From Octopus sinensis (taxonomy: Eukaryota): DNA of 21,562 nucleotides. Positions 1 through 20,560 of this stretch are shown piece by piece; the first letter of the stretch is position 1; every line of letters starts with the position of its first letter. The stretch spans positions 1 through 21,562 of the forward strand of contig NW_021823706.1 of the NCBI RefSeq assembly GCF_006345805.1, in the 5' to 3' direction. The position numbers were made by a program, and so were the translations under genes. A model generated the notes under the pieces. That model searched no databases. It saw nothing but the letters and a program-made list of their open reading frames with translations, and had not been told where the DNA came from.

Positions 1-27
1 ATCTAAATTAATTTTTATATGAACATT

Positions 28-65
28 CAGTACCGTTTTCGGTCATTTTGAGACCTTTTCAACTG
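28..65 (-). ncRNA. Type I hammerhead ribozyme motif, U3:A8 variant (mirror copy, one stem III mismatch)
   Basis: Minus strand: CAG-TTGAAAA-GGTC-tcaaaat-GACC-GAAA-ACG-GTA-CTG. Confidence 0.55.
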
Positions 66-286
66 TACGATTAAATAATTAAATTTAGAAAAAATTAGAA
101 GAAAAGTTTTTTTAAAGGAGATATTTCTATAGTAGTGTTCAGATATAAGTGGCATCATTCTGCCTTTCTTGACTCCCTGTTTGCACTTGACTGCCACTTA
201 TATCTGAACACTACTATAATTCCTTTAAAAAATTTTCTTCTAAAAATTTCTTTAATTTTCTCTATTTTAATTTAATTATATCGTTA

Positions 287-324
287 CAGTTGAAAAGGTC
301 TCAATATGACCGAAACCGGTACTG
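287..324 (+). ncRNA. Minimal type I hammerhead ribozyme, U3:A8 core variant
   Basis: Stem I CAG(287-289)/CTG(322-324); core TTGAAAA(290-296); stem II GGTC/GACC; GAAA(312-315); palindromic stem III ACCGGT; GUA cleavage triplet ending at 321. Confidence 0.7.
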
Positions 325-371
325 AAATGTTCACTATAAATTATTTTAGCATTTTCTATTTTGACTTATTT

Positions 372-385
<14 letters not shown>

Positions 386-660: not shown

Positions 661-687
661 CTTTTTTCCTGTCTGTCTCTATCTCCA

Positions 688-725
688 GACACACACACAC
701 CCAAACACACACACACACACACACA

Positions 726-770
<45 letters not shown>

Positions 771-800
771 ATATATATATATATATTATAGATATATACA
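688..800. repeat. (CA)n + (TA)n microsatellite
   Basis: Direct sequence. Confidence 0.95.
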
Positions 801-935
801 TACTTCTAATATAGGATAAGATGTTTTCCAAAAAAATCCGTCAACGTGACCAGCTTATTAATACCTTTAAAGGTGAAATTATAAACAATGGCAAAAGAAA
901 AAGATTTCTATGCCAATATGCTGAGAATAGACTTT

Positions 936-991
936 AATCCTATAGCAAGCTTCAGTACACGTGTGACTGTCACGAGGCTTGCTATAGGATT
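936..991. other. Hairpin: 15-bp perfect stem (18 bp including one G-U) with nested palindromes in the loop
   Basis: AATCCTATAGCAAGC(936-950)/GCTTGCTATAGGATT(977-991); loop holds ACACGTGT and GTGAC-T-GTCAC. Confidence 0.9.
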
Positions 992-1090
992 TTACATTTA
1001 GATATAACTGGGGTACTTATGTGTACACATGACTCTTGCTTCTGCTTTTTTTTTTCATGGGTGCTTGTAAGTATTTCATTTATTTCTTAT

Positions 1091-1159
1091 CGTATTCTCT
1101 ACTGAAGAGGGAAAATTCCGTGGGATTAATCCCGAAATTGATTCAATATAGAGATAACG
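1091..1159 (+). ncRNA. Complete type I hammerhead ribozyme
   Basis: Stem I CTCTA(1097-1101)/TAGAG(1149-1153), extendable with bulges to 1091/1159; core CTGAAGA(1102-1108); stem II GGGA/TCCC; GAAA(1134-1137); stem III ATTGA/TCAAT; AUA cleavage after 1148. Confidence 0.8.
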
Positions 1160-1313
1160 GATTTTTTAAAAGATTCTGTTCGCTTGCCTTCCTCGATTTC
1201 AGCACGACGTGTATTCATGGTGAATGTATATTGTAATGTGGTGATTGACGATTTAAAGTCTCTTCTCAGCGTATTGGCATAGAAATCTTTTTCTTTTGCC
1301 CTTGTTTATAATT

Positions 1314-1527
1314 GTGTGACCGCGTGTGCATCGTTGGCGATTTTCTTTCTGCGTCTTCCCTTCCTTGGACTTTTCCTTTTTCTGTTTCTGACGAGGAGCT
1401 CCGCTCGAAACGTTAAATCCTCCTTTCTTTCCTTTCCTGAGCGTCCAATAACACTATACTTGTTCCACGTCCTCGCGTTGTTGTGTTTTTTCTTTGTTCA
1501 TGTTTGGATTAACTATATATATATATG
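1314..1527 (+). mobile_element. Penelope-like element terminal (pLTR) fragment, family shared with 6490-6685 and 14938-15127
   Basis: Three homologous copies in the window (CTGAGCGTC..AATA..ACT..TTG..CCACGTCCTCG.GTT) carry the same HHR motif. This copy ends in (TA)n. The PLE assignment follows from the known association of minimal HHRs with PLE termini. Confidence 0.65.
1384..1418 (+). ncRNA. Minimal type I hammerhead ribozyme motif
   Basis: GTTT-CTGACGA-G-GAGC-tcc-GCTC-GAAAC-GTT-AAAT; extra residue after A9; palindromic ACGT stem III. Confidence 0.62.
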
Positions 1528-1649
1528 ACTGGAATGTCAAGGCTAGATTGCCTTTGATTATATAGTTCAATCCTTGCTGACCTGGGGTTAAATAACAAAA
1601 ATGCTAACTGCGACCCAGCTATTACGACTAAAATAACAATTATTACTAT

Positions 1650-1843
1650 AACACAAGGTCTGAAATTTTGGGGGAAAGGGCTTCTCGTTTACATCGATTC
1701 TAGTACTCAACTGGTATTTATTTTACCGAACCCCGAAAGCATGAAAGGCAAAGTCAGTCTCGGAGGCATTTGAACTCAGAATCGGAAGAACTGCCGCTAA
1801 ACATTTCGTGTAACGTGCTAACGACTCTACCAGCTCGCCACCT
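1650..1843 (-). mobile_element. tRNA-derived SINE family A, diverged
   Basis: Homologous to 19928-20157 (CCCCGAAAG.ATGAAAGGCAAAGTC...GAACTCAGAA...CCAGCTCGCC.CCT) but with a different tail. Confidence 0.75.
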
Positions 1844-1909
1844 ATAAATTATATAAAGACACGACGAATACAGATACAGCTACAACAACAGCAGCAACAA
1901 CACTGGGAA

Positions 1910-3290: not shown

Positions 3291-3623
3291 GAAGGTGCAT
3301 GGCTCAGTGGTTAGAGCATAGAGCTTACGATCGTGAGGTTGTGAGTTCGATTCCCGGACCGGGCTGCGTGTTGTGTGCTTGAGCAAGACACTTTATTTCA
3401 CCTTGCTCCAGTCAACTCAGCTGTAGAAATGAGTTGCGACATCACTGGTACCAAACTGTATCGGCCTTTGCCTTTCCCTTGGATAACATCAGTGGTGTGG
3501 AGAGGAGAGGCTGGTATGTATGGGCGACTGCTAGCCTTCCACAATCTTGCCCTGAGTTGTGCCTAGGAGGGTAACTTTCTCGGTGCAATCCCATGGTCAT
3601 TCATGACCGAAGGGGGTCTCCTC

Positions 3624-4681: not shown

Positions 4682-4909
4682 TATTTCTTTACTACCCACA
4701 AGGGGCTAAACACAGAGAGGACAGACAAACGGATTAAGTCGATTACCTCGACCCCAGTGCGTAACTGGTACTTAATTTATCGACCCCGAAAGGATGAAAG
4801 GCAAAGTGGACCTCGGCGGAATTTGAACTCAGAACGTAACGGCAGACGAAATATGGCTACGCATTTCGCCCGGCCTGCTAACGTTTCTGCCAGCTCACCG
4901 CCTAAAATA
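4682..4909 (-). mobile_element. SINE family A, full length, 10-bp target-site duplication CTCTGTACCC
   Basis: Near-identical to 19928-20157 apart from a short tail deletion; CTCTGTACCC at 4672-4681 and 4910-4919. Confidence 0.9.
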
Positions 4910-5344: not shown

Positions 5345-6160
5345 AATGATTATTATTTAAGACGTTGCATAGTATCCAATATCGTGACATTGATTGAAAA
5401 AAATTGTGTCTACCGTTGGTTTGTACTGTCTGTCAAGTCACAACAACAGTACTTTACGTAATATGTATGCTTGTTTCAAGTAATGCCGACTTTTGCAATA
5501 CGCTTAGATTGTAGGGTACTTCTAAAGTTTCCAGATGTTTCTTCAGATTGGATGGTATTGAACCCAATGCTCCGATGGCAATAGAGACAACCTTTAATAT
5601 TTGACTCTCGTAGCTGCCATATCTTGGCGATCTCAATTCTCAGGTCTCCATATTTATCGATCTTTTCTCTTTCTTTCATGATAATATGTTGATCTCCTGG
5701 CACTGCCACGTCGATTATTAGGTACTCTTGTTTGTCCCTCTTAAAAGTTACTATGTCCGGCTTTTGGTGCTCTAACACCTTGTCTGTCTGAAAGTCAAAA
5801 TCCCAGAGGGTTTTTGCCTTCCCCTTTTCGTCCATTATCTTTTCTGGTGTATGTTGATACGAAACACGCATTACCACCCATCCATACTTTCGGCATAGAA
5901 GCCATTGAAGGTTCTGCGTTACCTTGTGTCTGCGCTTCTACCTCTTTCTGCACAAGACTTTCACAAGCACTAACAATGTGAGCCCTCTTTCCACACATTC
6001 TGCAGAGGTTCGTTGCACTTGTGTGGTATCTATCTCATTTCACTACGTTGGTATTCAATGCCTGATCCTGGGCAGCGATAATTAGGCTTTTAGTTTTCTT
6101 TTTTAGGTCACCCTTGTTGCTGAGCCACCCCCATGATGCTTCCTGATCTTTTAAGTTGTT
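5345..6160 (-). mobile_element. 5'-truncated R4/Dong-clade non-LTR retrotransposon (zinc knuckle + restriction-like endonuclease), pseudogenised
   Basis: SWGWL..GDLKKKTKSLIIAAQDQALNTN; CRMC..HIVSAC; KTLWDFDFQTDKVLEHQKPDIV..IIDVAVPGD..KEREKIDKYGDL; IAIGALG; frameshifted; (TAA)-rich tail near 5345. Confidence 0.87.
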
Positions 6161-6489
6161 ATATATATATATATATTGGGTACAGGACGTCACCAACTGT
6201 GCAAATAACATGAAACGCGTAAACAAACGAGGAAAAAAACGAGTGAAATACGTAAACAACGAAAAAAAATTGGAAGACTGGGCAACTAAACACAGAGAAA
6301 GGACCCTTCATCAGTTGTCGGCTGTCTATCTACTGCTCATTTCGAGCATTCAATGACAATATGAGTCTTCAAAAACAGTTGCTCCCTTAAATTCTAAAAT
6401 AAAATTTAGGATTTTTGAGAACAAAAAAAAAATGACAGTAGAGACATACAAGGAAACTGAACACATTCCCAAACGTAACTACATGTGGA

Positions 6490-6685
6490 TTGTGAGCGAT
6501 TTTTTCCTCCGTCTTCCTTTTCTCTTGGACTTCCCTCTGCCTCCTGTTTCTGAAGAAGAGCTATGCTCGAAACGTAAAACACCCGTTCTTTCCTTCCCTG
6601 AGCGTCTTATTAATACTTTGCATGTGCCACGTCCTCGTGTTTTTTTTGTTGTCTTTTTTGTTTTCGTTTTTTTTTTATTAACTTT
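6490..6685 (+). mobile_element. PLE terminal fragment (same family as 1314-1527)
   Basis: Homology to 1330-1500 and 14950-15110. Confidence 0.65.
6545..6581 (+). ncRNA. Minimal type I hammerhead ribozyme, best-preserved copy of this family
   Basis: Stem I TGTTT(6545-6549)/AAACA(6577-6581); CTGAAGA(6550-6556); extra A; GAGC-tat-GCTC; GAAAC; GUA cleavage after 6576. Confidence 0.75.
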
Positions 6686-6967
6686 TTATCGCACGCTCAC
6701 ACGGACCCCCCGTCCTTCCGACTGGCTTTGGAGCACCTAGTTCTACCATTTCGAGTGACTCCTTTGATTGATTAATGAAAACTTTACATCTGAAAGAACC
6801 CGTTCTCGTCAGATGACCGCATAGAATTCAAATATAAAGGATACCACCACTGCTTTAACATATTCACTTCAATAATGGAACTCAAAATATTTACATTGTT
6901 TCTGTTGTTATATCTCTAACAGAAGTGCCTCAATTTAAGTACAACAGAATCCTATTATAATTATTGA

Positions 6968-7044: not shown

Positions 7045-7122
7045 GTATATATATGTATGTATGTATATATTTATATACATTTATTTATTTACTTATATAT
7101 TATATTATTATATATATAATAT
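6970..7122. repeat. (TA)n microsatellite and low-complexity tract
   Basis: Direct sequence. Confidence 0.95.
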
Positions 7123-7125
7123 GTA

Positions 7126-7463
7126 GGAGGAGGAGGAGACCCCCTTTGGTCATGAATGACCATGGGATTGCACCTAGAAAGTTACCCTCCCAGGTACAAG
7201 TCAGGGCAAGATTGTGGAAGGCTAGCAGTCGCCCATGCATACCAACCTCTCCTCTCCACACCATTGATGTTATCCAAGGGAAAGGCAAAGGCCGTTATAG
7301 CTTGGAACCTGTGACGTCGCAACTCATTTCTACAGCTGAGTTAACTGGAGCAAGGTGAAATAAAATGTCTTGCTCAAGAACAACACACAGACCGGTCCGG
7401 GAATCGAACTCACAACCTCACGATCGTAAGCTCTACGCTCTAACCAATAACCATGCTCTTCAC
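7126..7463 (-). mobile_element. SINE family B, full length
   Basis: Reverse complement closely matches 3291-3626, including the GGTCTCCTCCTC tail. Confidence 0.9.
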
Positions 7464-8430: not shown

Positions 8431-8540
8431 TGCTGCAGTAATAGGACCTGAATATACCTCTACACGTCATTGAACATCCTTTTCGAAGTCGTACTAACGC
8501 GCGCGAGCAGACACATACACGCACGCACACACGCACTCAG

Positions 8541-8660
8541 ATAAATACACTCACACGTATAACTATATATATAAATACACTCACACGTATAACTATCTAT
8601 ATAAATACACTCACACGTATAACTATATATATAAATACACTCACACGTATAACTATATAT
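8541..8660. repeat. 30-bp minisatellite, 4 copies
   Basis: ATAAATACACTCACACGTATAACTATATAT x4 with a single substitution at 8597. Confidence 0.95.
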
Positions 8661-8681
8661 ATATATATATGGGTCTATATA

Positions 8682-8768
8682 CGTTGTGTCCTTGAGCAAG
8701 ACACTTTATTTCACGTTGCTCCAGTTAACTCAGCTGTAGAAATGAGTTGCAACGTCACAGGTTCCAAG

Positions 8769-8772
<4 letters not shown>
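8682..8772 (+). mobile_element. SINE family B internal (CORE) fragment
   Basis: TGTGTCCTTGAGCAAGACACTTTATTTCAC...GGTTCCAAGCTATA, ending in (TA)n. Confidence 0.85.
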
Positions 8773-8805
<33 letters not shown>

Positions 8806-9236
8806 GTGTGGTGTGTGTTTGGTGGTGTTGTGTGTGTCTACCAACGATAAGGCGATGATGATGATATTGATAATGATGTGTTCTATTATTGGCCACTTGG
8901 AAACTTGTCATGGTATAGGCATACGATAAACAGTCGATAAACAGACCTGGGACTCTTGTCGAAGACACTTTTGTTGTCACCCATTTAACCCGGAGCCATG
9001 TGGCTGGGAATTCTCTTTTTCTCATCTATTATATTCTTGTCTGTTTATCGGTTGTTTATTGTGTACACCTACCATGGCAAGTTTTCCACCCATTTCTCTA
9101 TGGAATATTTCGTCTTTTAAGCGATGTGCGCCTCTGTGTTTTTTTTCAATTCTATTTTCATATATCGTTTGCTATGTTTTCATTTCGTTTTTGGATTTGG
9201 TTTGCAAGATTCTTTATGTGAGTTTGTGTGTCAAGA

Positions 9237-9578: not shown

Positions 9579-9794
9579 AGGCGGCAAACTAGCAGAAACG
9601 TTAGCACACCGGGAAAGATGCTTAGCGGCATTTCGTCCGTCTTCACGTTCTGAGTTCAAATTCCGCCGAGGTTCACTTTGCTTTTCATCCATTTCGGGGT
9701 CGATAAATTAAGTACCAGTTGAACACTTGGGTCGATGTAATCGACTATCCCCCTCCCCATAATTTCAGGCTTTGTGCCTATAGTGGAAAGGATT
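9579..9794 (+). mobile_element. SINE family A, alternative-tail subfamily
   Basis: AGGCGGC...GTTCTGAGTTCAAATTCCGCCGAGG...CTTTTCATCC.TTTCGGGGTCGATAAATTAAGTACCAG; tail AATTTCAGGCTTTGTGCCTATAGTGGAAAGG. Confidence 0.88.
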
Positions 9795-9799
9795 TTCTT

Positions 9800-10560
9800 T
9801 TTGTTGTTGTTTTACTTCTCAGAGTGCTCGGCCTTGTTTGCTCGGGTTGATTTTTGTGTGAGCGGGCAGTAACCCGTTGTCAGAGGTCTCACAATTATAA
9901 GCTTTGGTACTTTGTTGTTAATTATCGTGGAAGACATTCAACATCCAAGTACCAATCTCAAAATCCTAGCTGTACCCAGCCGAGAGTCTCTTGGGCTTGC
10001 TCTGCTCTCATGTCAATTCCGATTTCCCTGACATATTTCTCGAACTTGGTTGTTAGTGCTCCGAATGCCCCTACAACTACTGGAATGACAGACACTCTCT
10101 TCATAGTCTACATTCTTGAAATTTCATCGTTTAATAGTCTGTACTATCTTTTCTAGTTCTTTGGCACTAATGCGTGCATCCCCAGTTATTGCAATATCTA
10201 TTGGTTTCCTTTTTCCTTTCATCTACCACAACAATGTCTGGTCTTCGAGCATCATCTAAGGAATGATATTAGATTGTAAAATCCCACAGTATCTTATATT
10301 CGTTGCTCTCGGCGACTCCTTCGGGTTCGTGTTCGTACCATTTCCTTACTCTGTCCAGGCCGTACTTCTCACAAAGCTTCCAATGACGAAACTTACCCAC
10401 GTCATCGTGTCTCCTTTTGTAGTGCTTTTCAGCCAGCTTCCTAAACTCGCTCATAATATATAAGATTGTTTCGCTTTTGCTGCCACACATCCTACAAAGG
10501 GGCAATTCGCTCCTCTTGTGTATTTGAAACTTAGTGTAAATAATTCCCAGAGCTTGTTCC
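9800..10560 (-). mobile_element. 5'-truncated R4/Dong-clade LINE (second, distinct family)
   Basis: EQAL..PLCRMCGSKSETILYIMSEFRKLAEKHYKRRHDDVGKF.HWKLCEKYG...KILWDFTI, then frameshifted RRPDIVV..DIAI.GDA, VVGAFG and GTARILRLVL; (AAC)n-like tail near 9800. Confidence 0.88.
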
Positions 10561-10562
10561 GG

Positions 10563-11147
10563 AGCGATAGGACGGATCCGGCTATCAGCTGAATCCATAG
10601 TGAAGATTGCCCCGCCGACCTCTTTTAACCGGGAGGGCAAGGCAGTTTTCCTTTGCCTAGTGGCTGTAGCGAAAGAGGTGGTATGGTGGACCCGTTTGAA
10701 AGTGCTATGGTCAGACACTTTCCTCTTTGGCCCAGGCCTCATCAACCTTTTCAAGTTTCACTTGAAAAGGAAGGTGAGAGTAGAGAGGGAAGTGCTGTCC
10801 GATAGCAAGTTTTCTGAAAGGGGGATAAATTTCGCAAGAATGGCTATTATGAAAGGAGCTACTCTGAGGTTACACCTGTGATTTAAAAAGGTAATATAAA
10901 AGGAGAAAGGGGCTCTCTACCCACCTTTTGACCAGGCTCCCGTTGGCTTTTATGGGTTTTTTCACCAGGAACCTTTCGTAACGCCTCCCCCTATTGGGAG
11001 TTTTTCGTTGTTAATTTTTTTTATTGTTACACTGTTTTTACTGGGTTTTTTTTTCACAAACGGACAAAACCCTTTGTAACCTTTCGTCCTGTTTTGTCTC
11101 TTTATGTAATAATTGATTTTTGTCAGCCCTTGTGGCCAATAAAAAAA
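10563..11147 (+). mobile_element. L1/Tx1-like LINE 3' fragment (ORF2 C-terminus to 10881, 3' UTR, poly-A)
   Basis: IGRIRLSAESIVKIAPP...FLCLVAVAKEVVWWTRLK resembles the AK.xIW..R motif of L1/Tx1 ORF2 C-termini; U-rich UTR ends AATAAAAAAA. Confidence 0.68.
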
Positions 11148-12401: not shown

Positions 12402-13388
12402 ACACCTGCATATCTGCTTCACATTAGATACTACTACGTTGATACAAATCACTTGACCATATGAAGTGTTTCACGTTGTATACTTTCTGACAACATTCAT
12501 TCATTCTAACCAACAATTCTCAATTCCCATTTCCGCTTGACATTCTTACACCCACGTCCTTTGAAGATGTCTGCCTTAAAAGTATTGCCTCTACGACTTT
12601 CATTTTCTTTTGAGTTCCAAAATACCAATCTATTTAGTGAGGCATCAATCATTACTTCCTCTCTCAGAGAAATTGTTTCGCAGAAATCTTGCAAGAAGCT
12701 ATCGTCCGTCCACCGTATTCATTTAAATCACTGGCTGACATCAAGTCGCCATTTTAGCTTTCTAAATATATGATTTGTGTCTTTTTTCTTTTTTTTATTT
12801 CCTAGTTTCGCTATTCTTTCTCAAAACCGAGAATTTGAAACGATAGGTATATACAGCCACAAGTATATAATATGAACATATGTATAATATGAATTTCTAC
12901 ACAACTACATGTGTGTGTGTGTGTGTGTGTGTATTCATATATAACTCTCTTACGGGTATGGCTTTAAACTGTATCCGGTAACGTGGCCCTATTTCGAAAG
13001 TTCTAGGATTCTGAGGAGAGTAAAACATATCTCTTAGATACTGTTGATTCCAGGTCTGCCCTGATTCCGAGTAAAAGCACCTATCAGTGCCCTCTCTATT
13101 GGTTATTTAGCATGTTATAGAAGAAACTCCAAGCACAAACCCTCACTGCTTTGTGAATGCCTTCGGGAAAAGAAAAGGGTAAGGAGAGTTAATGTCGACA
13201 ATAATTGAAGGAGTGAAGCACTCAGGCAGTCAAGTACCCTCTTTGGCACCCTTCTGACAACTCCAGGGTAGGTGGAATTTTCCAGCCCTGTAAAGCATTT
13301 GACTTAGAAGAAGGCTGCTCCGCCGCAAAACCTACAGCTTGATGGTCACTATCCGAGGCCGCGGATGCGAAGAAACTGCTATCGTCTT

Positions 13389-13431
<43 letters not shown>

Positions 13432-13700
13432 CGACGATGACGACGACGACGACGATGATGATGATGATGATGATAATGACGGTGATGATGATAACAATAA
13501 TGACGATGACGACGACGACGGTGATGATGATGATGATGACAGTGTTTGTAATGTTAGTATTGACGACGATGATTACGATCATGATGATGACGACGTCGAC
13601 GATGATAATGGTGATGACAACGTTGGTGATGATGATGACGAGGACGATGACATTGACGATGATGATGATTATGATGGGAACATCAACAAACGGGGATGAC
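13389..13700. repeat. (GAT/GAC)n compound trinucleotide microsatellite
   Basis: Direct sequence; explains the poly-M and poly-I ORFs. Confidence 0.95.
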
Positions 13701-14026
13701 AATCACAACTGTACGACCTTCCTTGTTTTATTAAATCAATGCGGAAACCTCAACGTGGTCGCTCGAACCTGCTTGAAACAATATCCAAATATGCCTGAAA
13801 TCACGATATTGTCTTATGAAAAGAATACATTGGATAATATTATCTCAGGTTGTTCACGGATAGAACGCCATCAATCTAAGGTTTAGTCGATCACGTGTTT
13901 GTGGTTTCTGCCAATACTAGAGCTGCTGTGTGTCATGCCCATTTTCCAGGTGTGGATGAGCAAGGATTTGCCTTAAACATTGTTTGGCGTGATTTTTTTC
14001 TTGGAGACAGTACAGTAGTGGTTTCT

Positions 14027-14252
14027 TATTTCTTTATTACCCACAAGGGGCTAAACATAGACGGGACAAACAAGGACAGACAAAGGGATTAAGTCGATTA
14101 CATCGACCCCAGTGCGTAAATGGTACTTAATTTATCGACCCCGAAAGGATGAAAGGCAAAGTCGACCTCAGCGGAATTTGAACTCAGAGCGTAAAGACAG
14201 ACGAAGTACCATTAAGCATTTCGCCCGGCGCGCTAACGTTTCTGCCAGCTCC
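14027..14252 (-). mobile_element. SINE family A, nearly full length
   Basis: High similarity to 19928-20157. Confidence 0.9.
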
Positions 14253-14732
14253 CCTGCTTGTCACCTACCTGCTCTCCTAAATTATGGTACAGAACCTGCT
14301 TAATCCTTAACAGGCGTATCGGTTCACGTGATATCAGGAATTGCCATACATAGTGGGTCTGTGTAACACATGTCTAAGGGCAGGCCCTCATCAGTGTCTT
14401 GGATGCCTTAATTACGGGACCCATCTTCTGCTGCTGGACCTTTAACTAGGTGCTCTGACAGGTACTACCACCCTTGGATCAGAGCGGACTTGGAAGTAGT
14501 ATAATGTAAAAAAGTTTTCAAAAGGAAAAAAAAAACAATCATTTAAAAATTACATTATTAACCTTAAATTTAGTATTAATTAAAAGAAAACAGAAGCGTA
14601 ATTACTTTCATTGTTAAATTCATGTGATATGACTTCATTATCGTCTCCACGTGACATAATTTCAATATTTTAATTGACAAAAGTTGAGTAAATAACAATT
14701 CTAAAAAAATTGTTTTGTTTAGAATATACTTT

Positions 14733-14887: not shown

Positions 14888-14937
<50 letters not shown>

Positions 14938-14939
<2 letters not shown>

Positions 14940-15127
14940 CCTCGTGTGTACCGTTGACGATTTTTTTTCCTCTGTCTTCCCTTCTCTGGATCTTTCCGAC
15001 GAAGAGCTCCGCTCGAAACGTTGAACCCTCCTTCTTTCCTGAGCGTCCATATAATACTATATTTGTTCCACGTCCTCGCGTTGTTGTGTTTTTCTTTTTC
15101 TGTGTTTTTCTTGTTTTGGATTAACTA
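14938..15127 (+). mobile_element. PLE terminal fragment with damaged HHR (CCGACGA core at 14996-15002; stem I 5' strand deleted)
   Basis: Homologous to 1314-1527; AGAGCTCCGCTCGAAACGTT retained; flanked by (TA)n on both sides. Confidence 0.65.
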
Positions 15128-15469
15128 TATATATATATATATATATATCAACTTTTTATCCAAGGGGAGGCATAGGAGCAACAACCACAGAACACACAAA
15201 ATTCAAGATAGACCAAATACATGCAATCTTATATACTAGTTTATATCTATAACATTCCGACATATTAGAAATTTAAAATTCAGTAATATATAAGTATTAT
15301 ATACAAATAAAATATAAATACAAATATAAATATAAATGTTGCATATAACACGCTTAAAACTGTTAGAATAAGAGGAATAAATATTGTGATAATAAAATAA
15401 AAATATAGCATATCAAGACACGAGTAAAATTCCGGCGAATAGTACATAAAATATAATACACATACAAGT

Positions 15470-15509
15470 TTACAAAAATATAAGATATGTATATCTTATA
15501 TTTTTGTAA
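15470..15509. other. Perfect 19-bp inverted repeat with 2-nt spacer
   Basis: TTACAAAAATATAAGATAT-gt-ATATCTTATATTTTTGTAA. Confidence 0.9.
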
Positions 15510-15524
15510 GCTTATATTTTCTAA

Positions 15525-17040
15525 GCACTGTTGGAAAGGCCTCTGCTTGCATTATCCTGTCCAGGCTGCAACTGCTTGCTTTTCGAATTTATCCAGAATC
15601 GCAGTGTGGCTTTAGAAGAAGCATATCAACTATTGACATGATATTCTCCATACGCCAACTTCAGGAGAAGTCCAGAGAGCAGAAAATGCCATTATATATG
15701 GCCTTCATTGATCTGACAAAGTAGAAAACGCCTCTTCATCCTGCTCCAAAAAATCGGATGTCCACCAAAGCTGCTGAGGATCATCACATCTTTCCATGAT
15801 GAATATGCAAGGCACCATGCAGCACAATGGTTCAACATCAGCCGCCTTCCAAATAAAAAAATGGGGTAAAGCAAGGTTGTGTCCTTGCTCCTACATTATT
15901 TGGCATCTTCTTCTCGCTGCTGCTGTCACATGCCTTTGTGACATCAGATGATGGAGTGTTTCTGCACAGTAGAAGTGATGGGAAACTGTTCAATCTCTCG
16001 CGTCTGCGTGCCAAGACCAAAATCAGAAGCGTCCTGATCAAGGAGATGCTATTTGCTGATCATGCCGCTCTGGTATCACACACAGAAGAAGCCCTACAAA
16101 GGCTCATAAACTGTTTTGAGCAAGCATGTGGCAACTTTGGCTTAGTTATCAGCCTCAAGAAGACCAACATCATAGGTCAGGCTACATCGACCATCCCAAA
16201 CATACATATTGGAGACCACAGACTACAGGAGGTGGAGTAGTTTACCTATCTTGGCTCTACCGTCACCTACAACCTATCCCTTGATACTGAGCTCAAAATA
16301 CGCATTGGCAAGGCAGCTGCTGTGATGGCCCAACTCTCCAAACGAGCATGGGACAACAATAAGCTGACCAAGACCACAAAAATGAAGATTTACCAGGCAT
16401 ATGTACTTAGCACTCTACTGTATGGAAGTGAGACTTGAACGCCATACGTCGCCTAAATATCTTTCACCTGCGCTGCCTCCGGAAAATCCTTCGCATCAAA
16501 TGGCAGAATCATGTCCCTAACAAAGATGTCCTCAAGCAAGCAGGAATACCAAGCATGTTTACACTCCTCACGCAAAGACGTATGAGATGGCTTCGACATG
16601 TTAGCCGTATGGAAGATGGCAGAATTCCCAAAGACATACTCAACGGAGAGCTTGGTCTGTGGGAAGACTGTTCTTACGATACAAGGATGTTTGCAAAAGG
16701 GACATGAATGCCTGCAACATGAATATTACCAACTGGGAAGCAGTTGCCAGCAACCGTGGAGATTGGCGACGTACCGTAAAAGAGGGAACACAAAGGAGTG
16801 ACATAGAGGTAGAGGAGAAATGGAAAGACAAGAAAAGACGTCAACAAGAAAGTATGACATTACAACCAACCAGGCAACGTCTTCGCTTCATTTGCGGCAC
16901 CTGCCAGAGGGAGTGTTTGTCCAGGATAGGACTACACAGCCACAGCAGGAGATGTATTAGGACATGAAATGCAAAAGCCGAACTAGATTATTTTATGCGC
17001 AACTCCATTGTCTCCCGAGACAAAAAGGATGCCAACAACA
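15525..17040 (+). mobile_element. 5'-truncated RTE-clade LINE (RT domain to 3' end), pseudogenised
   Basis: YPESQCGFR..STIDMIFSIRQLQEK.REQ.MPLYMAFIDLTK; GVKQGCVLAPTLF; MLFADHA (catalytic ADD mutated); FTYLGS; STLLYGSET; C-terminal C..C..HSH..C zinc finger; tail CCATTGTCTCCCGAGACA..AGGATGCC(AAC)n; stops and deletions. Confidence 0.93.
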
Positions 17041-18490: not shown

Positions 18491-18549
18491 TACCACTTAT
18501 GAAATCAGCGTAAGACTTCTACGGTGATCTTATAATCTGACGAGGGTAG
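18491..18549 (+). ncRNA. Type II-ordered hammerhead-like motif with long stem III and irregular stems I/II
   Basis: GAAA(18501-18504)-TCA-gCGTA..TACGg-TGA-TC(18529)-TTATAAT-CTGACGA(18537-18543)-GGGTAG; TTACC(18490-18494) can pair with GGTAG. Confidence 0.35.
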
Positions 18550-18580
18550 TTGAGTTCAATACAAGGCGCCGGTGAGAGTT

Positions 18581-18621
18581 ACTGACGAGCGTTAATGTAA
18601 ACGCGAAATCACTGGTGATCT
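18581..18621 (+). ncRNA. Hammerhead core with perfect stems II and III but only 1 bp of stem I
   Basis: CTGACGA(18582-18588)-GCGTT-aatgta-AACGC-GAAA-TCAC-tg-GTGA-TC; AUC triplet ends at 18620. Confidence 0.6.
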
Positions 18622-19140
18622 CGGTATGCCCGGTACTTAGGGAACTCGCTTCCTTTGTCCGTAATTAAGACGGTGCGTAAATATGGCTATGAGGTGTTTT
18701 GACTCTTATTTCTAGCAATACTGGTGCTGAATAGCGCCCTCAGTCGCTTTAGTGAAGTGTATATATATATATATTAGAAGAAATGAGGTACTCAGAAAAT
18801 CGGATAGTTTGTATTTACAGATATTTGTTTGTATATTACATTTTTTATATATATCTCATATCACTTAGATCATTAGCGCTTTCTCCCATTCTAGTGGGGT
18901 TTTCAAATCAAATTAAGTTCCTGTGTGAGGAGTTTTGACTATTTTATAGTGGACTATTTTATAGAGTTTGTAGTGGTGGGGAGGAATATAAGACAGTACA
19001 TCCATCACCCTCTTGTACTGTCTTATATTCTCAAGAGGGTGATGGATGTACTGTCTTATATTCCTCCCCACCACTACAAACTCTATAAAATAGTCCACTA
19101 TAAAATAGTCAAAACTCCTCACACAGGAACTTAATTTGAT

Positions 19141-19177
19141 TTGAAAACCCCACTAGAATGGGAGAAAGCGCTAATGA
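19141..19177 (+). ncRNA. Degenerate U3:A8 hammerhead motif (mirror copy on minus strand at 18870-18906)
   Basis: TTGAAAA-C-CCCA-ctagaa-TGGG-A-GAAA-GCGC-TA; palindromic stem III AGCGCT; CUA triplet; 10.1/11.1 mismatch and weak stem I. Confidence 0.45.
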
Positions 19178-19206
19178 TCTACGTGATATGAGATATATAT
19201 AAAAAA

Positions 19207-19590
19207 TCTCTCTATATATAAACGGCAGTTTGTCTGTCTGCGTGTCTGTGTGTCTGTTAGGTTGTACCCTCACCCTGACCACGGCTTTCAACCGATTCTG
19301 ATGAAACTTGACACACACATAGCCCAATGTCATAATTCAAAACTAACGCAGCGAAAATTTTGAAAAATTCCCCCAGTTCTGAAAAAAATCGATAAATTCG
19401 ACATGGGGTCGAGAATCAGAAATACAAACCACAGACTGTCTAGGGGACGCAACTCGACCTTTTTAACTCTCAAAAAAAATTTACCATCATTTTTTTCCCA
19501 TTTTTTTGCTATTTTTTGGCTATAACTCTCTAAAAATGCTTTATAGTTATTTCCCTTACAAACCTGAGCAACGCCGGGCGATACTGCTAG
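19207..19590 (+). mobile_element. Non-autonomous Helitron (384 bp), complete
   Basis: 5' TCTCTCTATATATAAA; GTCTGT microsatellite; CCGATTCTGATGAAACTTG core; 3' GCAACGCCGGGCGATACTGCTAG; inserted between A(19206) and T(19591) with no TSD, shown by the opposite palindrome arm. Confidence 0.92.
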
Positions 19591-19927: not shown

Positions 19928-20157
19928 ATTTCTTTACTACCCACAAGGGGCTAAACACAGAGGGGACAAACAAGGACAGACAAACGGTTTAAGTCGATTA
20001 CGTCGACCCCAGTGCGTAACTGGTAATTATTTATCGACCCCGAAAGGATGAAAGGCAAAGTCGACCTCGGCGGAATTTGAACTCGGAACGTAACGACAGA
20101 CGAAATACGGCTACGCATTTCGCCCGGCGTGCTAACGTTTCTGCCAGCTCGCCGCCT
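19928..20157 (-). mobile_element. SINE family A, full length, inserted in (TA)n
   Basis: Head AGGCGGCGAGCTGGCAGAAACGTTAGCAC; B-box-like GAGTTCAAATTCC; central GGTCGACTTTGCCTTTCATCCTTTCGGGGTCGATAAA (resembles conserved Deu/Nin-type SINE domains); tail GCCCCTTGTGGGTAGTAAAGAAA. Confidence 0.92.
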
Positions 20158-20228
20158 CTATATATATATATATACATGCACATTTACACAAACACATATA
20201 GATAAATAGAACAATACATACACATTGC

Positions 20229-20560
20229 GGTGACCCCCTTCGGTCAGACACTGACCATAGGTTTGCACCAGAGAGTTACCCTCTGAGGCACAAGTCTGGG
20301 CAAGGTTGTTTTATGGAAGACCAGCAGTCGCCCATGCATACCGGCCTCCCCTCTCCATGTCACCAATGTTGTCCAAGGGTAAGGCAAAGGGAGCGATACA
20401 GCTTGGCACCAGTGACGTCGCAACTCATTTCTACAGCTGAGTGAACAGGAGCAACGTGAAATAAAGTGTCTTGCTCAAGAACACAACACGCAGCCCGGTC
20501 CGGGATTCGAGCTCACAACCTCACGATCGTAAGCTCGACGCTCTAACCACTGAGCCACAC
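20229..20560 (-). mobile_element. SINE family B, full length, different subfamily
   Basis: Homologous to 3291-3626; variant tail GGTCAGTGTCTGACCGAAGGGGGTCACC. Confidence 0.9.

What the first reader, a model, noticed from the sequence alone, without database searches (positions are those of the whole stretch)
877..1313. Inverted-repeat-bounded 437-bp element carrying a complete hammerhead ribozyme and a long hairpin
Seen: 61-bp terminal inverted repeats (3 mismatches) enclose an 18-bp hairpin with nested palindromes (936-991) and a type I HHR with every core base and all three stems intact (1091-1159). Its stem II looks tandemly duplicated (GGGAAAATTCCG / GGGATTAATCCC), allowing two alternative folds. 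Established: HHRs mark Penelope-like element (PLE) termini and retrozymes. Inference: a plus-strand transcript would fold into a rod-like, self-cleaving RNA, possibly an undescribed non-autonomous ribozyme-bearing retroelement.
Basis: partly seen in the sequence, partly recalled or inferred. Interest (0 to 1): 0.8.

Follow-up and report, generated by a model that had tools for sequence, protein, structure and literature searches.

The report
Inverted-repeat unit with hammerhead-like motif

Summary
The sequence features are real. The 61-nt arms at 877-937 and 1253-1313 differ at 3 positions. There is an inner hairpin at 936-991. A type I hammerhead descriptor match spans 1091-1159, with predicted cleavage after A1148.

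The motif is unlikely for a single window: about 2e-4 to 2e-3 in shuffles, and it is the only hit among 540 permuted cores. But no Rfam hammerhead model scores on it, its active fold is a minor conformer, and no second copy could be found anywhere I could search.

No retrozyme hallmark is present: no tandem copies, no clear TSD, no family.

The new result is that the adjacent repeat A (1316-1526, three copies in the window) carries a Penelope-type minimal hammerhead at 1388-1414, so the genome hosts hammerhead-bearing retroelements.

Best reading (0.4): a Penelope-type head-to-head insertion, made of a 376-bp 5'-truncated copy plus a 61-bp inverted copy, with an inherited and probably weak ribozyme. 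Main rival (0.3): an ordinary MITE with a chance motif.

At most this is a new member of a known kind. Interest is modest.

The parts
877..937 (+). Left arm of the 61-nt inverted repeat. In the preferred reading it is an inverted 5'-truncated copy of the 3' end of the unit.
   Evidence: 58/61 complementary to 1253-1313
1253..1313 (+). Right arm of the inverted repeat. In the preferred reading it is the 3' end of the + strand unit 938-1313.
936..991 (+). Internal hairpin, 18-nt arms (17/18 paired), 20-nt loop with short palindromes, directly abutting the left arm.
1091..1159 (+). Type I hammerhead-like motif: helix I 1096-1101/1149-1154, CTGAAGA 1102-1108, helix II 1109-1112/1130-1133 with 17-nt loop, GAAA 1134-1137, helix III 1137-1140/1144-1147, predicted cleavage 1148/1149.
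   Evidence: motif and chance rates; no Rfam match; fold not favoured
1122..1133 (+). Perfect 12-nt palindrome GGGATTAATCCC. This local hairpin competes with helix II of the motif.
   Evidence: (centroid structure)
1314..1315 (+). Two bases (GT) between the right arm and the 5' end of repeat A.
1316..1526 (+). Repeat A, copy A1: a ~210-bp SINE-like unit ending in (TA)n. Other copies at 6484-6689 and 14937-15138.
1383..1419 (+). Penelope-type minimal hammerhead in A1: helix I tgttt/aaatc, CTGACGA 1388-1394, bulged G1395, helix II GAGC/GCTC with loop TCC (1396-1406), GAAAC-GT 1407-1413, H17 = T1414.
   Evidence: 2 hits at homologous positions in A1 and A3 versus 1 in 6000 shuffled windows
686..802 (.). 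(CA)n then (TA)n microsatellites, ending 75 bp upstream of the unit.

Best explanation
The 437-bp unit is most likely the footprint of one insertion of a short, non-coding, hammerhead-bearing retroelement of the Penelope-like / animal-retrozyme kind. Its layout is the head-to-head arrangement those elements often produce. A 376-bp 5'-truncated copy lies on the + strand (938-1313). A 61-bp 5'-truncated copy of the same 3' end lies inverted on its 5' side (877-937). Both outer ends are therefore 3' ends, and they read as terminal inverted repeats.

The hammerhead at 1091-1159 would be inherited from that family. In a + strand transcript it would cut after A1148, leaving a 2',3'-cyclic phosphate and a 5'-OH. 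With one ribozyme and no tandem copy, it could only trim a read-through transcript, not release a circle. With its long loop 2 and the competing local hairpin, it is probably weak or inactive as a monomer.

The neighbour, repeat A, is a second and unrelated hammerhead-bearing repeat in the same orientation. The 2-nt junction suggests either insertion at a shared TA-rich target or a template switch by the reverse transcriptase.

Shown: the anatomy, the statistics, and the hammerhead in repeat A. Inferred: the mode of insertion, the family membership, and any catalytic activity.
For: (1) The motif is too good for casual chance in one window. It occurs 1/6000 (strict) and 11/6000 (loose) in shuffles. 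It is the only hit among 540 permuted cores on the real sequence. The expected count inside the unit is 3e-6 to 5e-5. There were 0 hits in 131 kb of other DNA.

(2) The same window holds a Penelope-type minimal hammerhead in repeat A. It is intact in 2 of 3 copies that are only 74-78% identical to each other. [quoted passage not shown] Hammerhead retroelements are therefore resident here, and such genomes are reported to hold several families (PMC4209133).

(3) PLE insertions 'often' carry an inverted 5'-truncated copy that forms flanking inverted repeats, and they favour microsatellites (PMC8557442). Here (CA)n(TA)n lies 75 bp upstream, and repeat A ends in (TA)n.

(4) Another repeat family in the window, P, occurs both as an inverted dimer (1-372) and as a solo arm (~476-680). 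Head-to-head dimers of short repeats therefore recur locally.

(5) Helix I is exactly 6 bp followed by an internal loop, and helix II is exactly 4 bp, which is the canonical animal type I geometry (PMC4209133).

(6) Both hammerheads are on the + strand, and the unit's 3' end meets repeat A's 5' end with only GT between them.
Against: - No other copy of the unit was found, so family membership, boundaries and covariation are untested.
- The unit shows no sequence similarity to repeat A.
- The motif does not have Penelope-type minimal architecture. There is no bulge after A9, helix III is 4 bp, and the 15.2-16.2 pair is U-A.
- It scores on no Rfam hammerhead model.
- The active fold is a minor conformer.
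- No RT or GIY-YIG remnant of a PLE is in the window. Only LINE-type RVT_1 fragments were found.
- No target-site duplication flanks the unit. The best candidate is GTGA, offset by 2 nt.
- MITEs are far commoner than PLE mini-insertions as a source of 400-bp units bounded by inverted repeats (my own knowledge).
Confidence: 0.4

Rival explanations
1. An ordinary miniature inverted-repeat transposable element (a non-autonomous DNA transposon) with 61-bp terminal inverted repeats. The hammerhead-like motif is a chance match with no function.
For: The unit fits the MITE profile: 437 bp, 34.6% GC, no coding capacity, long and nearly identical terminal inverted repeats, and a subterminal hairpin. 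A palindromic TA inside the arm ends (AAT-TA-TAAAC ... GTTTA-TA-ATT) would fit a Tc1/mariner-type TA duplication in an AT-rich palindromic target (inference). No Rfam hammerhead match. The hammerhead fold is disfavoured. The published warning that descriptor-only hits are mostly false positives applies (PMC6155905). At genome scale, the loose descriptor rate implies of the order of 100 chance matches per Gb (extrapolation).
Against: The chance rate of such a motif is 2e-4 to 2e-3 per window and 3e-6 to 5e-5 within this unit. The window is demonstrably hammerhead-rich. No second copy is in the window. The arm termini match no transposon superfamily signature that I recognise (own knowledge). 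The TSD is ambiguous.
Confidence: 0.3
2. A one-off local rearrangement: an inverted duplication of 61 bp by template switching or hairpin repair in otherwise unique or decayed sequence. The hammerhead-like motif is chance.
For: The unit is unique in all data reachable. The interior is rich in short palindromes (ATGTGTACACAT 1019-1030, GGGATTAATCCC 1122-1133, and the hairpin 936-991), suggesting a template-switch-prone stretch.
Against: It needs the same improbable chance motif as the MITE reading. The arms are separated by 315 bp. The sharp boundary next to another mobile element looks insertional.
Confidence: 0.1
3. [quoted passage not shown] This includes a MITE-like element that carries or captured a ribozyme, or a hammerhead retroelement nested inside a MITE.
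For: The inverted repeat and the statistically unusual motif coexist in one compact unit. No paper linking hammerheads with MITE-type elements was found, so it would be new. A 7-nt direct repeat, TTCATGG (1054 and 1214), brackets a 153-nt segment containing the motif.
Against: There is no family evidence. A 7-mer repeat in 315 nt is expected by chance (my estimate is 3-5 such pairs). There is no tandem organisation, no poly(A), and no clear TSD. The fold is a branched hairpin, and the ribozyme conformer is minor.
Confidence: 0.12

Closest known systems
Minimal hammerheads in the pseudo-LTRs of Penelope-like elements (Cervera & de la Pena 2014, PMC4209133)
   Same: Type I topology, an intact CUGANGA/GAAA core with G10.1-C11.1, location in short dispersed non-coding repeats of an animal-type genome, mostly as single motifs. 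Repeat A next door fits this description in every tested respect.
   Different: [quoted passage not shown] Its helix II is 4 bp with a 17-nt loop, rather than 7-8 bp. Its helix III is 4 bp, rather than none. Its 15.2-16.2 pair is U-A. No PLE ORF is nearby.
Complex tandem/inverted insertions of Penelope-like elements (Craig et al. 2021, PMC8557442)
   Same: An inverted 5'-truncated copy next to the 5' end gives inverted repeats that bound the insertion. Microsatellites are nearby. The TSD is hard to discern.
   Different: Those are described for multi-kb autonomous elements and their pLTRs. Here the whole structure is 437 bp, and no related autonomous element is known.
Animal non-LTR retrozymes (Cervera & de la Pena 2020, PMC7229834; Li et al. 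2026 preprint, 10.64898/2026.07.22.740005)
   Same: Size range of 170-400 nt, low GC, a type I hammerhead, no LTR/PBS/PPT, and a proposed dependence on PLEs.
   Different: Retrozymes are tandem repeats, so two ribozymes flank each monomer and release circular RNA. This is a single copy with inverted, not direct, terminal repeats.
[quoted passage not shown]
   Same: Small, AT-rich, non-coding, with long terminal inverted repeats.
   Different: Copy number and TSD are unverified. MITEs are not known to carry hammerheads (one search found no such report).
Sm-alpha, the SINE-like hammerhead repeat of Schistosoma (as summarised in PMC6155905)
   Same: A short non-autonomous dispersed repeat with a type I hammerhead. 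This is the nearest analogue for repeat A and for a solo 938-1313 unit.
   Different: Sm-alpha has canonical loop 1-loop 2 contacts and very fast cleavage. Nothing comparable can be shown here.

Membership tests
Hammerhead ribozyme, type I (flagged motif 1091-1159) | Conserved core: C3 U4 G5 A6 N7 G8 A9, G12 A13 A14, A15.1-U16.1, H17 not G | tested here: met
   CTGAAGA 1102-1108, GAAA 1134-1137, A1137-T1147, A1148
Hammerhead ribozyme, type I (flagged motif 1091-1159) | Three helices around the core, with a G10.1-C11.1 pair | tested here: met
   helices of 6, 4 and 4 bp; G1109-C1133
Hammerhead ribozyme, type I (flagged motif 1091-1159) | Match to a curated covariance model (Rfam hammerhead families) | tested here: not met
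   no hammerhead hit even at E<=10 on 91 nt. Repeat A's minimal hammerhead is also missed, so this test is weak for atypical variants.
Hammerhead ribozyme, type I (flagged motif 1091-1159) | Loop 1-loop 2 tertiary contacts of canonical animal type I motifs | tested here: inconclusive
   The geometry fits: a 6-bp helix I followed by a 2x2 internal loop, and a 4-bp helix II. But loop 2 is 17 nt with its own 3-bp helix, and the conserved contact nucleotides are given only in figures I could not read (PMC6155905, PMC4209133).
Hammerhead ribozyme, type I (flagged motif 1091-1159) | Family of homologues with conserved core and compensatory changes in the helices | not testable with these tools
   No homologue found. 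The source genome is not in any searchable collection.
Hammerhead ribozyme, type I (flagged motif 1091-1159) | Self-cleavage at the predicted site | not testable with these tools
   This is an experiment. In silico, the competent fold is about 1e-3 of the ensemble.
Penelope-type minimal hammerhead (repeat A, 1383-1419 and 6545-6581) | Core plus an extra nucleotide between 9 and 10.1, G10.1-C11.1, palindromic 15.2-16.2 with no helix III loop, helix I of 4-5 bp | tested here: met
   Helix II is 4 bp rather than the 7-8 bp described for Schistosoma. Copy A2 has U4->C.
Penelope-type minimal hammerhead (flagged motif) | The same features as the row above | tested here: not met
   no bulge, a 4-bp helix III with a loop, and U-A at 15.2-16.2. 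The minimal descriptor does not hit it.
Animal non-LTR retrozyme | Tandem repeats of 150-450 bp, each with a type I hammerhead | tested here: not met
   a single copy, with no tandem array between 600 and 1900
Animal non-LTR retrozyme | Low GC (<45-50%) and no LTR/PBS/PPT | tested here: met
   GC 34.6%.: no long direct terminal repeats.
Penelope-like element insertion | RT plus GIY-YIG ORF, or homology to a known PLE/pLTR | tested here: not met
   only LINE-type RVT_1 fragments and no GIY-YIG signature. A non-autonomous derivative would not need the ORF in cis.
Penelope-like element insertion | Inverted 5'-truncated copy at the 5' side, giving flanking inverted repeats | tested here: inconclusive
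   The anatomy is compatible, but it cannot be told apart from intrinsic TIRs without other copies.
MITE | Terminal inverted repeats, small size, no coding capacity | tested here: met
MITE | Target-site duplication of fixed length | tested here: inconclusive
   no 2-10-bp direct repeat immediately outside 877/1313. Only a palindromic TA inside the arm ends is compatible.
MITE | Multi-copy family with shared boundaries | not testable with these tools
   Unique in the window. The source genome is unavailable.

The most novel reading that the evidence does not exclude
The inverted repeats and the ribozyme belong to one new kind of mobile element, a foldback or MITE-like unit whose transcript presents a working type I hammerhead. 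Alternatively, the two unrelated hammerheads on the + strand (cuts at 1148/1149 and 1414/1415, 266 nt apart) act together to release a retrozyme-sized RNA from a composite locus.
Probability: 0.07. Interest if true: 0.65.

Novelty: new member of a known kind. Interest (0 to 1): 0.33.

Why it matters
If the motif is genuine, it adds a hammerhead variant to the already large and variable set carried by Penelope-related repeats in animal genomes. This variant has three helices, a long loop 2 and a U-A pair at 15.2-16.2. It would also give a compact example of the head-to-head insertions these elements make. That would interest people who catalogue ribozymes and transposable elements, but it would not change the picture of either.

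It would matter more only if the inverted repeats proved to be an intrinsic part of a ribozyme-bearing family, because hammerheads have not been tied to inverted-repeat (class II-like) elements.

The practical lesson is that descriptor-level hammerhead hits need family evidence. The better-supported ribozyme at this locus lay just outside the flagged coordinates.

Tried and rejected
(1) Looking for other copies.
- Exact-pattern scans of viral, metagenome and genome contigs with a 20-mer from the arm and with the 36-nt ribozyme core gave either nothing or seven loci that share only the seed.
- A scan for repeat A's hammerhead block in viral contigs gave nothing.

(2) The protein route.
- 16 ORFs from the window are not on record.
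- The 66-aa ORF across the motif and the 70-aa ORF in repeat A have no homologues.
- A LINE fragment finds relatives at 58% identity or less on eukaryotic contigs of marine metagenome assemblies.
- About 95 kb of those contigs contain none of the window's repeats.

(3) A shared 3' tail between the unit and repeat A. The resemblance is T-rich low complexity, with scores inside the shuffled null.

(4) A nested insertion inside a MITE. Only a 7-mer direct repeat was found, which is expected by chance.

(5) A palindrome-rich sequence inflating the hammerhead chance rate. The unit holds only 4 strict scaffolds, and the permuted-core test is clean.

(6) tRNA-derived SINE heads: none.

(7) Any other Rfam family in 800-1400: only sub-threshold noise.

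It was replaced by 20 stop-free segments.

(9) A literature search for the sequences, and for hammerheads in MITEs: nothing.

Full report
CONTEXT. The window is eukaryotic, animal-type DNA. It has no long ORFs and many (CA)n, (TA)n and trinucleotide microsatellites. It holds decayed LINE reverse-transcriptase fragments (Pfam RVT_1 at 15443-16237+; C-terminal fragments at 5479-6034- and 10272-10757-) and several short interspersed repeat families. The source genome could not be identified. No ORF from the window is on record. The best LINE relatives, at 58% identity or less, lie on eukaryotic contigs of marine metagenome assemblies that share none of the window's repeats.

CHECKING THE OBSERVATION. 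The inverted repeat is exactly as described. Arms 877-937 and 1253-1313 are 61 nt with 3 mismatches and sharp outer ends. The hairpin 936-991 is present, with 17/18 bases paired. The hammerhead motif is also formally present, with helices of 6, 4 and 4 bp, every core base, G10.1-C11.1, and H17 = A1148.

I estimated the chance rate of the motif in three ways:
- In 6000 dinucleotide shuffles of the window, there was 1 motif as good as this one (any topology) and 11 under a looser descriptor.
- Counting three-way-junction scaffolds in the real unit (4 strict, 61 loose) and multiplying by the core probability of 7.6e-7 gives an expected count of 3e-6 to 5e-5 within the unit.
- Of 540 permuted cores of identical composition scored on the real window, only the true core hits.

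In addition, 131 kb of other real DNA gave no hit. The motif is therefore not a by-product of local palindromes, and it is unlikely for a single window. Extrapolating the loose rate, a Gb-sized genome would still hold of the order of a hundred such matches.

Four points count against authenticity:
- No Rfam hammerhead model scores at any threshold, even on a 91-nt segment.
- The 69-nt segment folds no better than its shuffles, and the MFE pairs CUGA with UCAA.
- The hammerhead-competent ensemble fraction is about 1e-3 in isolation and 5e-5 in the full unit.
- The perfect local hairpin GGGATTAATCCC (1122-1133) competes for the 3' strand of helix II.

The transcript would form a long terminal stem closing a branched interior, not a rod.

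WHAT LIES NEXT TO IT. The sequence starting 3 nt beyond the right arm (1316-1526) is a ~210-bp repeat, here called A. It has two further copies at 6484-6689 and 14937-15138, which are 74-78% identical, and each ends in TTAAC(TA)n.

- A1 (1388-1414): CTGACGA-G-GAGC-TCC-GCTC-GAAAC-GT-T.
- A3 (6550-6576): CTGAAGA-A-GAGC-TAT-GCTC-GAAAC-GT-A.
- A2 is damaged (CCGACGA, plus a 16-nt deletion upstream).

This motif shows the features that Cervera and de la Pena (PMC4209133) list as arguing against a random origin of Penelope-type minimal hammerheads. [quoted passage not shown] In helix I, position 1.4 changes from U to C opposite G, keeping the pair. A descriptor for this architecture hits A1 and A3 at homologous positions, against 1 hit in 6000 shuffled windows. 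Rfam misses it too, so Rfam's silence says little about atypical animal variants.

The genome therefore hosts hammerhead-bearing retroelements at high local density. That raises the prior that a second family exists.

WHAT THE FLAGGED UNIT IS. It is unique in the window and unrelated in sequence to repeat A. It has no coding capacity and 34.6% GC. There is no tandem organisation and no direct repeat immediately outside the arms: the left flank is ...AAAGGTGA and the right flank is GTGTGACC.... The only TSD-like options are a palindromic TA inside the arm ends, or GTGA offset by 2 nt.

Two known mechanisms give such a structure.

(a) Penelope-like insertions. Craig et al. [quoted passage not shown] They also describe microsatellite insertion bias and TSDs that are hard to discern. 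On this reading:
- 938-1313 is a 376-bp 5'-truncated + strand copy.
- 877-937 is a 61-bp inverted copy of its 3' end.
- The hammerhead is inherited.
- The nearby (CA)n(TA)n, the neighbouring repeat A in the same orientation, and a second family (P) that occurs both as an inverted dimer and as a solo arm all fit.

(b) A MITE with intrinsic TIRs and a chance motif.

Weighing the two: MITEs are much commoner a priori (own knowledge), but reading (b) has to absorb the 1e-4 to 1e-3 coincidence in a window shown to be hammerhead-rich. Reading (a) has to accept an atypical ribozyme and an unseen family. I put (a) at 0.4 and (b) at 0.3. A one-off inverted duplication gets 0.1.

HOW IT WOULD WORK. If genuine, the ribozyme acts in cis on a + strand transcript. 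Helices I-III assemble around the core as the RNA emerges, before the right arm is made. The 2'-OH of A1148 attacks the adjacent phosphate, which gives a 5' fragment ending in a 2',3'-cyclic phosphate and a 3' fragment with a 5'-OH (established hammerhead chemistry, PMC6155905). In PLEs and retrozymes this trims unit-length RNA out of longer transcripts (PMC4209133, PMC7229834). With a single ribozyme and no tandem copy, it cannot yield a circle here. All of this is inference; nothing about activity is shown.

COMPARISON AND NOVELTY.
- The unit does not meet the definition of an animal retrozyme, because the tandem-repeat criterion was tested and not met.
- Its motif is not a Penelope-type minimal hammerhead; that architecture was tested and not met.
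- It may still work like, and derive from, that group.
- It meets the structural criteria for a MITE, but not the testable criteria of TSD and copy number.

Under the preferred reading it is a new member of a known kind. Under the main rival, the ribozyme is not a real feature.

The best-supported new fact from this work is repeat A's minimal hammerhead, which is itself an instance of a well-described phenomenon.

Noticed in passing
window 1316-1526, 6484-6689, 14937-15138 (+ strand): Repeat A is a ~210-bp SINE-like repeat ending in TTAAC(TA)n. It carries a Penelope-type minimal hammerhead that is intact in two copies (cores at 1388-1414 and 6550-6576) and mutated in the third (U4->C at about 14997). 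It is not detected by Rfam.
   Followed up: yes
window 18538-18625 (+ strand): A third hammerhead-like core: CTGACGA-GCGTT-AATGTA-AACGC-GAAA-TCAC-TG-GTGA-T-C. It has a 5-bp helix II and a helix III, but no convincing helix I. A second CTGACGAG lies 44 nt upstream. It may be a decayed ribozyme of another family. The region is not repeated in the window, apart from a (TA)-rich 33-mer.
   Followed up: partly
window 1-372 and ~476-680: Repeat family P occurs once as a near-complete head-to-head inverted dimer (arms of about 175-190 nt, about 75% identical, running off the window start) and once as a solo arm. Both abut (TA)n/(TG)n/(CA)n microsatellites. No hammerhead core is present.
   Followed up: partly
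window 1645-1861; also 4739-4907, 14082-14254, 19994-20176 (+) and 9579-9784 (-): Repeat B is the most abundant short repeat in the window, with five copies that are 72-74% identical. Its nature was not determined. ARAGORN finds no tRNA-like head.
   Followed up: no
window 3345-3571, ~7100-7358, ~8445-9025, ~20202-20474: Another multi-copy repeat, recognisable from recurring translated strings such as LEQDTLFH(L/V)APVNSAVEMSC in several places and on both strands. It is probably a SINE.
   Followed up: no
window 15443-16964 (+), 5479-6034 (-), 10272-10757 (-): Decayed non-LTR (LINE-type) retrotransposon remnants: RVT_1 hits, a weak CCHC zinc knuckle, and conserved C-terminal segments. The nearest relatives are at 58% identity or less on eukaryotic contigs in marine (TARA) and other ENA metagenome assemblies.
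   Followed up: partly
window ~13365-13700: A long ATG/ATC-type trinucleotide microsatellite gives poly-Met, poly-Asp and poly-Ile 'ORFs' of 107-192 aa (longest stop-to-stop frame 13308-13883). These are artefactual as genes.
   Followed up: no
window ~18916-19336 (- strand): Two stop-free segments begin with the same ~40 residues (WGFQIKLSSCVRSFDYFIVDYFIEFVVVGRNIRQYIHHPL), which suggests a local duplication. Neither segment has a Pfam hit.
   Followed up: no
L008 minus strand, 6972 and 7257 (ENA ERZ25878469 contig): Two nearby copies of CTGATGA-A-GGC-AATA-GCC-(G/A)AAA in an unrelated eukaryotic contig. This may be a minimal-hammerhead-like repeat in that genome.
   Followed up: no
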